In this document: one piece after another, positions 1,281-5,577 of the stretch
How positions within the stretch are numbered: position 1 is the stretch's first letter
Layout: each line of letters opens with the position of its first letter
Source: Ascidiella aspersa
Taxonomy: Eukaryota
Length of the DNA stretch: 64,000 nt
Direction: 5' to 3'
NCBI GenBank assembly: GCA_963924565.1
Contig: OZ004609.1
Coordinates: forward strand, 25,730,001 to 25,794,000
Made by a program: the position numbers and the translations under genes
Notes under the pieces: model-generated
What the model saw: the letters and a program-made list of their open reading frames with translations, nothing else
The model's database searches: none
Told to the model about the DNA's origin: nothing

Positions 1281-3329
1281 CCGTAGGAGAATATTCTCGC
1301 CATTAGATCGATCATGAAAACGCACGACAGCGTCATGGCAACGCTGTCAAACATCAGTTGCGAACTAGGGCTCTTTTCTGGGATGCTGAGGTCAATTATC
1401 ACCATGATAATGTCGAGAAGGATCAATATGATGCCAGCCACCCTGACACCCAGGTTCTCGACAAAGCTGCGAACTTTGAACTGGACTCGCCTTGGTTGAA
1501 CAAGTAAAACAGTACTAAACGAAAACAGCTGCTTAACAAAATTGCCTTTGAAACGGTTATATTTGTGTGGTGACAAAATCAAATTAAAATTTAATAGATA
1601 ACATCGGGTGAAACAATTGCCAATAAAATGTATGAAAACCTCTCTTCATATCGATTTCAATCGACAAGGCGACAAATAAAATTCGAAATAATAAAGACAG
1701 ATGGTTATTCTTATTAATTTTTTTTTTTTTCTTTTTTTCAAAATCGATATTTTTAAGGTGCAGTTCTTGTTTGTTCTCCGCATAGCGGTTTACAGTCTGA
1801 TCACATTACGATTAATATTTCGTTTTATATAATTGGCAAGAACCTTAATTTAAAATGTTACGTTGGAAACTAAAATGATGGAATATAAATGTATTAAATT
1901 ATTTACCCAAGTTTTTTTATTGAAAAAATGTTTTTCTTAAAACCATATGTGATCAGCCAGTGTTGTAAACAATTCATTTTAAATTGATTTAAGTCTTAAT
2001 CTGGTCATTTGCAAACTAACTAAAGTCCAAAATCAAGTCATTTTTAGGAAAGAGCAAGTCAAGTCCAGGACATTACGATAGTTGCCGAACTCAAAACCAG
2101 GTCATAGAAACGGCTTTAAAACAAATGCAGAGCTAACTGATGAACGCGTTGCATTCTAAGCGTTATACGCATCGGAAACCGCATAAAAAACAAAACAAAT
2201 AGCAAGTTAACATTTGTTACATTCAATATAATAATTGGCTTTCATACTTAAATTTTACTAAAACCTATTCAAATAAAATCACTTTAATTTAAGTCAAGTC
2301 ATAACAGTGACTTAAGAGCACTCAAGTCAGGCCATTTATGTCAATACGACATGAGATCTGATTTTAACAAAGTCGCTTAGAACAACAATAAAGGTAAAAC
2401 ACTTGAAACCTTATAAGGTTGAATCGAAATGAATCGGCTTAAAAAGATTTTTTGTGCAAGCTCAACCTCCCCTCCTCCTCTTCCCTCCCTCCCCAAAAAA
2501 TAAAAATAAATTGATGTGATCTTGGCCCTGCCTAGCTTGCTAGCACCAAACAATTTCGTAGTCGAACTGTTTGCTAAGCCAACTAAAGACGTTTCCACTT
2601 AAAATGTAGGATTTTCGTTGAGCGTTAATTTGCTCAGAATCGGTGAACCAATGGACAGTGTACCACTTATAAACAGGGAAGGCTTAACGAAAGTCTGATA
2701 TTACTGTTATTACAGCATTGTAAAAAAAAGTCCCAGTCAAGTCAACTACAAAATAACTTGAATTAAGTCCAAGCCATTTTCATAGCTTGTCAAGTCGGTG
2801 CATCAAAATATATTCTAAAATTATTAAAGTCGGCCAACTTATCCGATCCCGAAAAATATAATAAGGAAACAATACAATATGGCGAGCAAAGCCGAAATTG
2901 GGTAAAACTAAGCAAATTTACCAAGAAATTTTAATAAAACATCAAGTTTTTTAAAAAACAGTGACTATACGTGCACAAAGTTGCCTGTCATTGCCATTAC
3001 AACACTGGCTCTTACTCGAGGTCGTTGGCCGGTTCGCGGTGCACCTTTCCACTGTCCACTTCATCTTGGGGGAACCACAGGTTGGATATTTCCGGTATCG
3101 ATATAGCGGTATCCAAAGGCAAGGCGTGGCTTGATTTGCCGTTGACAGCTGCGGGCCCCGTTGTTACGTCGTCTTGCCAGCTGACTCGCTTACCAAGTCT
3201 GCCTTCATTCTTGCGGGATGCCCTGGGTGGTGCTTGAGGGGGAGCGGTCTGTAGCGCTCCGTTGCCAGGCAACTGGGCGTCGTCGTCCTCCACCGATTTG
3301 GCTTCAACCTCCGGTATGTCCTCCATCAT
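1281..3329 (-). CDS. VSP: Voltage-sensing phosphoinositide phosphatase (VSP/TPTE), 5' part only: N-terminal tail plus S0-S2 of the voltage sensor; gene continues beyond position 1
   Basis: Exons 3329-3016 and 1490-1281, GT-AG, phase-2 junction gives ...NDLE|RVQFKVRSFVENLGVRVAGIILILLDIIMVIIDLSIPEKSPSSQLMFDSVAMTLSCVFMIDLMARIFSYG. This matches the recalled Ci-VSP S0-S2 (RVQFRVR...IFLDII..IIDLS.P.KS.SSQ..D..A..LSC.FM.DL..RIF.YG), including the S1/S2 acidic countercharges and the S2 Phe. Probable 5'UTR intron 3588-3349. Confidence 0.93.
1958..2835. repeat. Dispersed (C)AAGTC motif cluster, probably a decayed MITE
   Basis: Many AAGTC/CAAGTCAAGTC copies in VSP intron 1, starting after CAGTGTTGTAAAC near 1958. 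Confidence 0.4.
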
Positions 3330-5577
3330 TGCGGAACGGTAAGTGCGACTGGCAAAAAGAATGCGCACCGGAGTTGGCTGGGGAGTCGGGGCAGGAGTTA
3401 ATGATCGACAGGTTACGGGGTAAATGCCAGTCTCGACCTCGCACTGCAAACCGAACTCGTGCGCACGCCGGCTGACGTGTGATGCACACCTTATTGCAGC
3501 CTGTAATGCATCTGACGCGGGCATTTAAAGGGCATCGGTCGTTGGTATTGCGGTATAGTACAATCACAAGCCAGGTTTACAAAGTTACCCTTAAATGTCG
3601 CGCGCGCACAGGTAAAACTTTACTGGTGGTATTGGGATCGGAACGCTTTTCTTGTAGATGGGAACTTTTTCTCTTACTAATTAACTATTTTCCAATGATT
3701 GTGCACCTTGAGGCACACATTTACGAATCTTTGATGATTTTAATTTGGCAATTTTCACCCTTTGTTTTGTTTAAACTGGAACTTTTTAATAAATTTTCGT
3801 ATCGACTTATTTTACGAGTCTAAAAGAACAACAACCGCCCTATTATATTTTTCTCTTTTTATTTAATATAAGGTTATCGTCATTTGTCATAAAATATATC
3901 AATTCTATGATAAGAGCATTGCCATCCAATTTTCGTAGCAATTTGTTGTTTAAACACTTTGCTGAAATTCGTTTTGAGAGTGTTATATCTCGTGCAAACA
4001 TACCGAATACTGCCACAGAACAAATGGACTTTGACGCTTTAAATCTATTTGCAAACGTGGCTGCCACCAAACAAACCACATTCGGGACATATTTGACCAA
4101 ATCGGCCGCTTTTCTAACTGTTTGACAAAACAAGAAAACGAGAAAGGTAAAATGTTTATTGGACAAAACTCACAAAAGCTGCTAAGTATAGCTGCAAAGT
4201 CGACGCTAGACAAGCTAGCAAATATAATCTCAATATCAGAAACCGAAGGGCAAAATCGCACGAAGTTTAAAGGCGATGGCATAAAGGCTCCGGGTTGATA
4301 CCTAAATTGATTTTTTCACACACATACAGACCCTCTCTGCGCCTCTGCGCCGTAACGGCTTGACACCAAAAAATTAACATTGGGGCTTGCTAGCATGTAG
4401 CGCAAAATTTATGCACATTGTATGATAATAGGTTCATTGGACAAGCTAGTCCAAGTCGAAACACGTTTGTCCAAATAAAATATGTTTTTGAAGCCACCAG
4501 CATAAAGCCTTTCGTGCGTTAACAAGTCAAGGTTAAATCTTTATTGGCCTTCCAGGAGTTTAACAGTTTTAATAATAGTTTTATGACCTCGCTGTTAAAC
4601 AGATGGGACTTACATTTAACAATGGACAAGACGTCGTTAGTATGGTGTTGCAATACGACCAGCCTCAGCATGAAGTGCCCCGAATTGGTCTGAATGAAAA
4701 CTGCATAGCTGCAAATGCTGGTACTGGAGGCGGTAAGCGCAAAGCAACAAAAACACATTTCAAAACAAACAAAAGACTGTAAATCCACTCGGCGGAGGAA
4801 TTTCAATTGAAATACGCGTACCATGTGTAGAAACAGTGGGAATAAAAGCCACCCTGCACAATGAGCAGTATTGTGGTGTATCCAGAGCCTATGATAGTTG
4901 AAAGGAAAATCAAAGAAGTACACTGTACCATTTTAGCGGAACTCCGTCAATTAAGAGAAGTGGGTTCACCGTAAAAAATCCAACCGAGTTTCTCTCAGAG
5001 GCCCTGGCGTGTAAAACGTGGGTACAGAAAACGTCGCTTTAACTGTGGAGAAAGGGATAAATTGCAACTGGGGGGAAACAAAAAAGCGACGAAAAAGCAA
5101 TCGCACAGGCAGACAAAAGTAAAAAATAAACGAAATACATTTACGTTTTCAGGTCGCGAAAACAAACAAATACATTCTTTCGGGTGAACAGTAAAAAGAA
5201 AGTCAGTACAGAAGAAGATACCGATCAGAAGTTTCCTTACGCCGTTATATGGTCGCTAAACGCTAGCAAACGCAGGCTAACAACGTTTCGGTATATTTCC
5301 TTTTCAGGCCAAACGGCAACTAGATGTCAGAAATAAAATGCGTACGTAGAAAAAAAATAATACGTCAGTGGGGTGGTTATACGCTCGGTATATCAAAAGA
5401 GTGTATAAATTGCCAATCTTAAAAAAGACTACGAGCATTAAAGGTCATAAAGTGCGCGGCGCGTGTGCTTCAGAAATCGTCAAAATAAGGGTATAAAAAT
5501 TACATATAGCTGCTTCCTTGTAGAATGTAGCCCTTGGATACCAAAACACCGAACGAAGCACACAAGGGCAAGTTAAT

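What the first reader, a model, noticed from the sequence alone, without database searches (positions are those of the whole stretch)
3177..3191. Candidate PP1-docking motif (KRVSW) in the N-terminal tail of the voltage-sensing phosphatase
Seen: GRLGKRVSWQDD in a predicted disordered tail. Established: it fits the PP1 RVxF/W consensus [RK]-x(0,1)-[VI]-x-[FW] with basic residues before and acidic after, and phosphorylation of the x-position Ser blocks PP1 binding; here that Ser sits in a basophilic KRxS kinase context. From memory, Ci-VSP has KKVHWND at the equivalent position in an otherwise poorly conserved tail, which would mean the motif is under selection. Inference: ascidian VSPs may recruit PP1, linking membrane voltage, phosphoinositide dephosphorylation and protein dephosphorylation, e.g. 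in sperm flagella. I know of no description of this.
Basis: partly seen in the sequence, partly recalled or inferred. Interest (0 to 1): 0.75.

Follow-up and report, generated by a model that had tools for sequence, protein, structure and literature searches.

The report
Conserved PP1-type motif in sea-squirt VSP
A five-residue K-x-V-x-W motif in the floppy inner tail of the sea-squirt voltage-sensing phosphatase is real and is kept in almost all tunicate relatives, which makes it a credible but untested docking site for protein phosphatase 1.

Summary
KRVSW is encoded on the minus strand at 3191-3177, in exon 1 of a complete voltage-sensing phosphatase (VSP) gene. Exon 2 matches the Ci-VSP voltage sensor at E 2e-21, and nine more exons lie just before the window.

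A motif K/L-x-V-x-W/F sits at the matching place in 8 of 9 tunicate-clade VSP tails, this one included. K, V and W/F stay fixed, and the two variable positions stay within RVxF-allowed residues. None of 112 non-tunicate VSP tails has a stringent RVxF match. AlphaFold2 puts Ci-VSP residues 1-88 below pLDDT 50, so the tail is predicted disordered.

- PP1 binding could not be tested.
- The "switch" serine is not conserved.
- No auxiliary PP1 motifs are present.
- The tail has other conserved islands, and IPEISxLW is stronger than the motif.
- Both islands are lost together in one lineage.
- The only published function of the Ci-VSP tail is plasma-membrane targeting.

No paper linking VSP to RVxF or PP1 docking turned up. 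My verdict is a real, selected, tunicate-specific short linear motif. PP1 docking is the best single reading, at about 0.35.

The parts
3177..3191 (-). KRVSW, the RVxF-type candidate PP1-docking motif (tail residues 47-51)
   Evidence: Read directly. Matches the loose, Hendrickx-type and Meiselbach-type patterns. The orthologous motif is present in 8 of 9 tunicate-clade tails.
3016..3329 (-). Coding part of exon 1: the cytoplasmic N-terminal tail, MMEDI...PANDL plus two bases of the next codon. Start is ATG 3329 or 3326; donor is CGA|GTAAGA.
   Evidence: ORF, sequence. tblastn of the Clavelina tail covers 3296-3015 at E 6e-6. About two RNA reads cover 3026-3132.
3075..3098 (-). IPEISNLW, a second tunicate-specific conserved island of the tail with unknown role
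   Evidence: In the MAFFT alignment of 9 tails, I-P-E-I-S..L-W columns are identical in 6-9 of 9 rows. It is degenerate in P0028, which also lacks the K-x-V-x-W motif.
3045..3059 (-). VDSGK, the counterpart of the [VIL]DDG[KR] island found in VSPs generally
   Evidence: The consensus of 73 VSPs shows IDDGK, with one nearly invariant tail column (D86 of P0021).
1281..1490 (-). Exon 2: pre-S1 helix, S1 and S2 of the voltage sensor. The acceptor ccaag|G at 1490 is favoured by homology; an alternative in-frame acceptor tttag|T lies at 1514.
   Evidence: Sequence. Matches 4g7v at E 2.1e-21. The junction ...ANDL-E-RVQFKV parallels Styela ...TDLERAQLKV. No RNA joint was seen.
1478..1489 (-). RVQF, a second loose RVxF-like string at the start of the pre-S1 helix; judged not to be a docking site
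   Evidence: Ci-VSP has GRVQF, which lies in helix 95-107 in blocks of pLDDT about 87. Clavelina, Styela and P0026 have KAQHK, RAQLK and RAQIW there.

Best explanation
KRVSW is one instance of a tunicate-specific short linear motif, K/L-x-V-x-W/F. It sits in the disordered cytoplasmic N-terminal tail of the voltage-sensing phosphatase, about 45-70 residues before S1.

The most likely single mechanism is RVxF-type docking. The motif lies extended in the conserved hydrophobic RVxF groove of the PP1 catalytic subunit, with Val and Trp (or Phe) buried and the basic residues contacting the acidic rim. The membrane-anchored VSP would then hold a PP1 molecule next to the membrane. PP1 could act on VSP itself or on neighbouring membrane proteins. 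In species with Ser at the x position, this one included, phosphorylation of that Ser would release PP1.

Shown here: the motif, its reading frame, its conservation pattern, its absence outside tunicates, and the predicted disorder of the orthologous tail.

Inferred: cytosolic exposure (from VSP topology), PP1 binding, and any downstream effect.
For: 1. The motif is in frame in exon 1 of a complete VSP gene.

2. 8 of 9 tunicate-clade tails carry it at the aligned place:
- window: KRVSW
- C. intestinalis: KKVHW
- C. savignyi: KKVSW
- Clavelina: KKVHW
- Styela: KTVRW
- P0026 and P0027: KQVSW
- P0029: LNVSF, plus KNVNF 21 residues later
. These sequences span a clade with SH-aLRT 98 that is sister to vertebrates.

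3. The variation is what RVxF allows. The basic or Leu position, Val and the aromatic stay fixed. Position 2 is K/R/T/Q/N and the x position is H/S/R/N. All of these lie inside the published stringent sets, and S and H are the residues most enriched at x in validated partners (passages of PMC4794898). The one aromatic change is W to F, the only two residues in the consensus.

4. Control: 0 of 112 non-tunicate full-length VSP tails (5,936 residues) match either stringent pattern, and 4 of 112 match the loose one.

5. AlphaFold2 of Ci-VSP with a 73-sequence alignment gives pLDDT below 50 for residues 1-88, with blocks of 31-43, and no packing of the motif onto the folded domains.

6. Basic residues precede the motif and acidic ones follow it. 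In 5 of 8 tails, at least 2 of the next 6 residues are D or E.

7. The genome has PP1-type catalytic subunit genes: 3 matches to PF16891 above the cut-off.
Against:
- Loose RVxF-like strings occur in about 25% of proteins (PMC4794898 passage). Conservation proves constraint, not the partner.
- The six-residue extended pattern [KR][KR]xVx[FW] is met only by P0026 and P0027 (read by eye).
- No SILK or MyPhoNE motif occurs in any of the 9 tails. A PhiPhi pair at +5 to +10 occurs in 1 of 9.
- P0028 lacks the motif and has also lost the IPEISxLW island. This hints that the two act as one module, and IPEISxLW matches no PP1 motif I know.
- The only published role of the Ci-VSP tail (M1-G103) is better plasma-membrane targeting (PMC7201886 passages).
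- Trp is the rarer aromatic in known motifs (F60 versus W5 in the PMC4794898 compilation), yet it is kept in 7 of 8 here.
Confidence: 0.35

Rival explanations
1. The motif is part of a forward-trafficking or plasma-membrane-targeting signal of the tail. It would be read by a sorting or anchoring partner other than PP1.
For: Fusing Ci-VSP M1-G103 to zebrafish VSP raised surface expression and sensing charge. The tail is described as known to mediate plasma-membrane targeting (PMC7201886 passages, citing Tsutsui 2013). N-terminal swaps rescue surface expression of other VSPs, and 'N-terminal trafficking motifs' are invoked (PMC12652588 passages). The motif lies inside M1-G103 at residues 50-54.
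Against: No paper I could read maps the targeting activity to particular residues. Tsutsui 2013 is not held. K-x-V-x-W fits no sorting motif that I checked or know of. Vertebrate tails that also traffic well, such as the human one, have no such motif (0 of 112).
Confidence: 0.25
2. K-x-V-x-W and IPEISxLW are two halves of one tunicate-specific module. The module would bind an unknown partner, sit at the membrane interface through its basic and Trp residues, or fold back on the enzyme to regulate it.
For: Both islands are tunicate-specific and both are degenerate in the same sequence, P0028 (NHLYP and IPNIKLSS). IPEISxLW is conserved more strongly than the RVxF-like motif. Trp-rich and basic segments often sit at membrane interfaces (general knowledge).
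Against: The spacing between the two islands varies from 22 to 47 residues, which is unlike a fixed bipartite string. AlphaFold2 shows no confident contact of either island with the folded domains; residues 1-88 are below pLDDT 50. Co-loss rests on a single sequence.
Confidence: 0.2
3. The primary function is a basophilic kinase site (KRxS, of PKA, Aurora or AGC type), not docking.
For: KRVS and KKVS fit [RK][RK]x[ST] in this species and in C. savignyi. Arg at p-2 is the Aurora determinant for RV[S/T]F sites (PMC8786283 passage).
Against: Ser is absent in C. intestinalis and Clavelina (His) and in Styela (Arg), while K, V and W are kept. Selection therefore acts on the anchor residues, not on the phospho-acceptor.
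Confidence: 0.05
4. The match is a chance similarity with no function, retained by descent.
For: The motif is short. Loose RVxF-like matches occur by chance in 5-18% of shuffled tunicate tails.
Against: The flanks have diverged beyond alignment, yet three anchor positions are kept in 8 of 9 sequences across the whole tunicate clade. Stringent matches are 0 of 112 in other VSP tails.
Confidence: 0.07

Closest known systems
RVxF-type PP1-interacting proteins (for example spinophilin or PNUTS-type regulators)
   Same: A short basic-x-Val-x-Phe/Trp string in a disordered cytosolic region, with basic residues before it and acidic residues after. It fits the consensus forms quoted in PMC4794898 and the description in PMC8786283.
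   Different: No binding data exist. No SILK, MyPhoNE or consistent PhiPhi companion motif is present. Most tails fail the six-residue extended pattern. The carrier is itself a membrane lipid phosphatase.
The Ci-VSP N-terminal region (M1-G103) as a plasma-membrane-targeting module, used in eVSP
   Same: It is the same tail. The motif (residues 50-54) and IPEISGLW lie inside the transplanted segment.
   Different: The published work assigns the effect to the whole segment, not to a motif, and does not mention PP1 (passages read). The original report (Tsutsui 2013) could not be read.
Membrane proteins that dock PP1 through a cytosolic tail (BRI2; NBCe1-B)
   Same: The idea of a membrane protein holding PP1c at the membrane. 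BRI2 is listed as a PP1 interactor and NBCe1-B as binding PP1c (abstracts seen in the listings).
   Different: NBCe1-B uses an FxxR/KxR/K site, not RVxF (abstract). Neither protein is voltage-controlled or a phosphoinositide phosphatase.
RV[S/T]F phospho-switches (Aurora B against PP1)
   Same: This species has Ser at x with Arg at p-2 (KRVSW), the arrangement described for phosphorylation that blocks PP1 binding (PMC8786283 passage).
   Different: The Ser is not conserved among tunicate VSPs. No kinase or phosphorylation data exist.

Membership tests
Voltage-sensing phosphatase (VSP/TPTE family) | S1-S4 voltage-sensor domain homologous to Ci-VSP | tested here: met
   Exon 2 matches 4g7v at E 2.1e-21. 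S3 and S4 exons with the RLLRIVRFVRIF arginine ladder lie in L005.
Voltage-sensing phosphatase (VSP/TPTE family) | PTEN-like catalytic domain with an HCxxGxxR loop, followed by a C2 domain | tested here: met
   HCKGGKGRTGT and the C2-region exons are found in L005. There are 11 ordered tblastn pieces at 57-59% identity to the Ciona, Clavelina and Styela VSPs.
RVxF-type PP1-interacting protein | Sequence fits the RVxF consensus | tested here: met
   KRVSW fits [RK]x0-1[VI]{P}[FW] and both five-residue stringent patterns. It fails the six-residue [KR][KR]xVx[FW] form because Gly precedes KR (read).
RVxF-type PP1-interacting protein | Motif lies in an accessible, disordered, cytosolic segment | tested here: met
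   AlphaFold2 of the Ciona orthologue gives pLDDT below 50 for residues 1-88. The cytosolic side is inferred from VSP topology.
RVxF-type PP1-interacting protein | Anchor residues conserved among orthologues | tested here: met
   8 of 9 tunicate-clade tails, with P0028 as the miss.
RVxF-type PP1-interacting protein | Auxiliary PP1 motifs (SILK, MyPhoNE, PhiPhi); helpful but not obligatory | tested here: not met
   SILK in 0 of 9, MyPhoNE in 0 of 9, and PhiPhi at +5 to +10 in 1 of 9.
RVxF-type PP1-interacting protein | Direct binding to the PP1 catalytic subunit that is lost on V/F(W)-to-A mutation | not testable with these tools
   No multimer prediction or bench assay is available. Structure prediction takes one chain only.
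RVxF-type PP1-interacting protein | PP1 catalytic subunit present in the organism | tested here: met
   3 matches to PF16891 above the cut-off in G000. This is expected for any eukaryote.

The most novel reading that the evidence does not exclude
Tunicate VSPs are membrane-anchored PP1-targeting subunits. One polypeptide would couple membrane voltage to phosphoinositide dephosphorylation while holding a Ser/Thr phosphatase at the same spot. The K-x-V-x-W site would work together with the IPEISxLW island and, in some species, would be switched off by phosphorylation of the x-position Ser. The PP1 groove is conserved across eukaryotes. The widely used Ci-VSP-derived tools that keep the tail (eVSP, and LOTUS-V-type voltage indicators) would therefore also drag host PP1 to the membrane.
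Probability: 0.2. Interest if true: 0.75.

Novelty: new member of a known kind. Interest (0 to 1): 0.5.

Why it matters
Ci-VSP is the reference voltage-sensing phosphatase. It is also a standard tool for depleting PI(4,5)P2 and for building voltage indicators. What its N-terminal tail does in native cells is unknown.

This work defines a conserved, tunicate-specific motif that points to one concrete partner, PP1, and gives clear mutants to test: V and W to A, plus the IPEISxLW island.

If PP1 does dock there, two things follow. VSP would link electrical signals to protein dephosphorylation as well as to lipid dephosphorylation. Experiments that use tail-bearing Ci-VSP constructs in oocytes or mammalian cells would also carry a hidden PP1-recruiting element. 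The tail segment M1-G103 is in eVSP (PMC7201886), and KKVHW is present in the LOTUS-V construct P0002.

If PP1 does not dock there, the same mutants should still locate the tail's membrane-targeting determinant.

Tried and rejected
Searches that led nowhere:
- The search for homologous proteins with the exon-1 peptide gave 5 word-sharing candidates, none at E <= 10.
- The PDB search with the tail gave only tau at E 0.34, a low-complexity match.
- Pfam on the tail found 0 families at E <= 10.
- The ESM Atlas gave no usable hit.
- The search of protein representatives with exon 2 gave only 20 hits, mostly exon-sized fragments (P0001, P0003, P0004 and others) that lack tails.
- The metagenome scan kept 80 loci. 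Only L006 and L007, the contigs of P0026 and P0028, were tunicate VSP transcripts with tails. L060-L063 are ascidian-like genomic pieces whose 3 kb of upstream flank holds no voltage-sensor or tail exon.
- RNA reads were too few to show the exon 1-exon 2 joint.
- Earlier notes of this scan hold nothing on this gene.

Readings considered and rejected:
- An internal donor-like TTG|GTAAGC overlaps the Gly-Lys codons. It would be out of frame with both exon-2 acceptors. The frame downstream of it is conserved with other tunicates.
- RVQF at the S1 edge as a docking site. It is helical and is not conserved beyond Ciona.
- Alternative motif classes. By regex on the 9 tails, calcineurin PxIxIT-like and LxVP gave no hit, and B56 LxxIxE hit inconsistently, at IPEIS in only 3 tails. 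An LIR reading of W-x-x-[ILV] was checked by eye only; it fits C. intestinalis alone.
- A conserved PKA-type switch. The Ser is not conserved.
- From memory, the PP1 regulator Inhibitor-3 carries a similar K-K-V-x-W string followed by acidic residues. A PDB sequence search with the Clavelina motif segment returned no PP1 regulator. This stays a recollection and carries no weight.

Steps not taken or not possible:
All searches were exon by exon, and the structure prediction used the Ciona orthologue P0021.
- Supplementary files were not asked for. PP1-interactome tables in supplements might list VSP/TPTE and could bear on the claim that the link is not in print.

Rows left out:
- P0002 (synthetic construct) and P0024 (fragment without a tail) were excluded from the counts.
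- The Styela tail was cut to residues 191-292 for the alignment.
- The tree used 23 of the 140 proteins held and the quick method. P0029 has a long branch, so its place is unsure.
Full report
**What is in the sequence.**
On the minus strand, codons AAG CGA GTC AGC TGG at 3191-3177 spell KRVSW in the context GRLGKRVSWQDD. They lie in the open frame 3012..3524.

The coding part of the exon most likely starts at ATG 3329 or 3326 (MMEDIPEV...). Other tunicate VSPs begin MEGF or MDDF. The exon ends at the donor CGA|GTAAGA, so its last base is 3016.

**The gene.**
Exon 2 ends at 1281 (GG|GTATGT) and encodes the pre-S1 helix, S1 and S2. It matches the Ci-VSP voltage-sensor chains 4g7v and 4g80 at E 2.1e-21 and 3.2e-20.

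The window is G000:C3:25730001-25794000. The 10 kb before it (L005) carries the S3 and S4 exons, the PTEN-like exons with HCKGGKGRTGT, and the C2 exons.

tblastn with tunicate VSPs gives 11 ordered pieces at 57-59% identity to Ciona, Clavelina and Styela. This is a complete VSP gene of an ascidian lineage that is not close to any of those three.

Two in-frame acceptors are possible for exon 2, at 1514 and at 1490. Homology favours 1490, because ...ANDL-E-RVQFKV parallels Styela ...TDLERAQLKV.

Every search was exon by exon.

**RNA and DNA reads.**
One RNA run of the same species label (X4) gave only 36 laid reads from about 6% of the run. Depth was 2.0 in bin 3026-3132, 0.21 in the bins on either side and 0 in 3240-3346. 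All of these reads had the first mate on the + strand, and no joints were seen. The 3' half of exon 1 is therefore weakly seen as RNA, and the splice pattern rests on homology.

DNA runs X1 and X2 cover the stretch and list no difference within 3177-3191. A T>C at 3083 in X2 and X3 changes Asn to Asp inside IPEISNLW.

**Is the motif more than chance?**
In 20,000 shuffles of this 104-residue tail, a loose RVxF match arises in 5.1%, the Hendrickx-type pattern in 1.9% and the Meiselbach-type pattern in 0.44%. A single hit is weak evidence, so the test is conservation.

**Conservation.**
The synthetic construct LOTUS-V (P0002) and the C. intestinalis protein P0021 both read ...RKSESVKKVHWNDVDQGP....

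Full-length relatives returned by the searches give these motifs:

| Sequence | Motif |
|---|---|
| C. savignyi | KKVSW |
| Clavelina lepadiformis | KKVHW |
| Styela clava | KTVRW |
| Unnamed transcripts P0026 and P0027 (89% identical to each other) | KQVSW |
| P0029 | LNVSF at the aligned place, and KNVNF 21 residues on |
| P0028 | none |

In a quick maximum-likelihood tree of 23 VSPs, these eight sequences form one clade (SH-aLRT 98) that is sister to vertebrates. P0029 branches deepest, on a long branch, and Styela branches next.

Counting the window, 8 of 9 tunicate-clade tails have the motif. As lineages, that is six with the motif and one without.

The fixed positions are K (or L), V and W (or F). 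The two variable positions use K/R/T/Q/N and H/S/R/N. All of these are allowed by the stringent RVxF sets. S and H are the residues most enriched at x among validated partners (passages of PMC4794898).

As a control I cut the tails of 112 non-tunicate full-length VSPs (5,936 residues in all) at the column of Ci-VSP residue 97. None matches either stringent pattern, and 4 match the loose one.

**The rest of the tail.**
The tail is not otherwise unconserved. A MAFFT alignment of the nine tails shows further islands: a weak VN[DE], a strong IPEISxLW (window 3098-3075), [VIL]DDG[KR] and PxxD[LIV] just before S1.

The DDGK island is shared by VSPs in general (consensus of 73 sequences). K-x-V-x-W and IPEISxLW are tunicate-specific.

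P0028 has lost both, reading NHLYP and IPNIKLSS. This is one observation hinting that the two belong together.

**Structure.**
AlphaFold2 on Ci-VSP (P0021) with the 73-row alignment gives mean pLDDT 80.3. Residues 1-88 are all below 50, with ten-residue blocks of 31-43. Only a four-residue low-confidence helix appears, at 72-75. The first confident helix is 95-107.

The motif therefore sits in a predicted disordered segment and is not predicted to dock on the enzyme's own domains. Low confidence is not proof of disorder.

The RVQF string at the exon-2 start (1489-1478) falls in that confident helix. In Clavelina, Styela and P0026 it is KAQHK, RAQLK and RAQIW. I reject it as a docking site.

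**Other motif classes.**
SILK and MyPhoNE are absent from all 9 tails. A PhiPhi pair 5-10 residues after the motif occurs in 1 of 9. [RK][RK]x[ST] fits only this species and C. savignyi. LxxIxE and PxIxIT-like patterns do not track the islands.

Basic residues precede the motif in most tails. In 5 of 8 tails at least two of the six residues after it are acidic.

**Literature.**
- Ci-VSP together with RVxF: 0 papers.
- Voltage-sensing phosphatase together with PP1-binding: 0 papers.
- Ci-VSP together with protein phosphatase 1: 3 papers. By title and abstract, all are about Kv7 channels, with Ci-VSP mentioned 1-19 times in the text.
- The broader search listed nothing on the subject.

What is published on the tail:
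- Passages of PMC7201886 say that Ci-VSP M1-G103, fused to zebrafish VSP, improves selective plasma-membrane localisation and sensing charge. They credit Tsutsui et al. 2013 for the targeting role. That paper and its companion are not held.
- Passages of PMC12652588 report N-terminal swaps that rescue trafficking, and they speculate about N-terminal trafficking motifs.
- PMC4654489 mentions fluorescent-protein insertions at residues 42 and 53 of the tail but gives no outcome for them in the passages I saw.
- PMC8786283 (passages) states that RVxF is the commonest PP1 docking motif, that it binds a hydrophobic groove, and that RV[S/T]F phosphorylation driven by Arg at p-2 blocks binding.

**Reading.**
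The motif is real, coding, selected and tunicate-specific. Among known motif classes, only RVxF fits all orthologous instances, including the W-to-F change in the deepest branch.

I therefore commit to PP1 docking as the single most likely mechanism, at about 0.35. Ahead of the other rivals stand a trafficking determinant (0.25) and a two-island module for another partner or the membrane (0.2). A kinase-site reading (0.05) and no function (0.07) trail.

The genome encodes PP1-type catalytic subunits, which is expected. The step from motif to binding is inference throughout.

**Novelty and score.**
If the reading is true, this is a new member of a known kind: one more RVxF-bearing PP1 partner. 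The point of interest is that the carrier is a voltage-controlled lipid phosphatase and a much-used laboratory tool. Interest is 0.5.

Noticed in passing
window 3075-3098 (minus strand): IPEISNLW is the best-conserved tunicate-specific island of the VSP tail (IPEISxLW in 7 of 9 tails). It has no known role and is degenerate in P0028, the one sequence that also lacks K-x-V-x-W.
   Followed up: partly
window 1478-1489 (minus strand): RVQF at the start of the pre-S1 helix is a second loose RVxF-like string. It is shared with Ciona (GRVQF, GRIQF) but not with Clavelina, Styela or P0026. It is helical in the Ci-VSP model, so it is probably not a docking site.
   Followed up: yes
window 3189-3194 (minus strand): The Gly-Lys codons just before and inside the motif read TTG|GTAAGC, a good splice-donor look-alike. 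Using it would be out of frame with both exon-2 acceptors. No reads bear on it.
   Followed up: partly
window 3083: T>C in DNA runs X2 and X3 changes Asn to Asp inside IPEISNLW (Clavelina has Asp there). Another difference lies at 3372, upstream of the start codon.
   Followed up: no
window about 260-411 and 1956-2062: These are short interspersed repeats. The first has at least 40 copies at 86-93% identity across the genome. The second draws very high depth and many loose ends in all runs.
   Followed up: no
L038 446-1015: A metagenome contig encodes a divergent VSP-like gene. Its N-terminal tail looks by eye like an SH3 domain (ALFDFE...-type core) followed by a VVDDGG island. No domain search was run. 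It would be a different, domain-based elaboration of the VSP tail.
   Followed up: no
P0002 and P0021, tail residues 64-70: Two C. intestinalis tail forms differ by six residues (PETRQE) between the K-x-V-x-W and IPEIS islands. This could be an alternative splice site or an allele.
   Followed up: no
G000:C2:31868447-31868590: A PP1-type N-terminal domain match lies in an uninterrupted 350-residue open frame. The two other matches sit in frames of about 66 residues, which look like exons. It is possibly an intronless PP1 copy.
   Followed up: no
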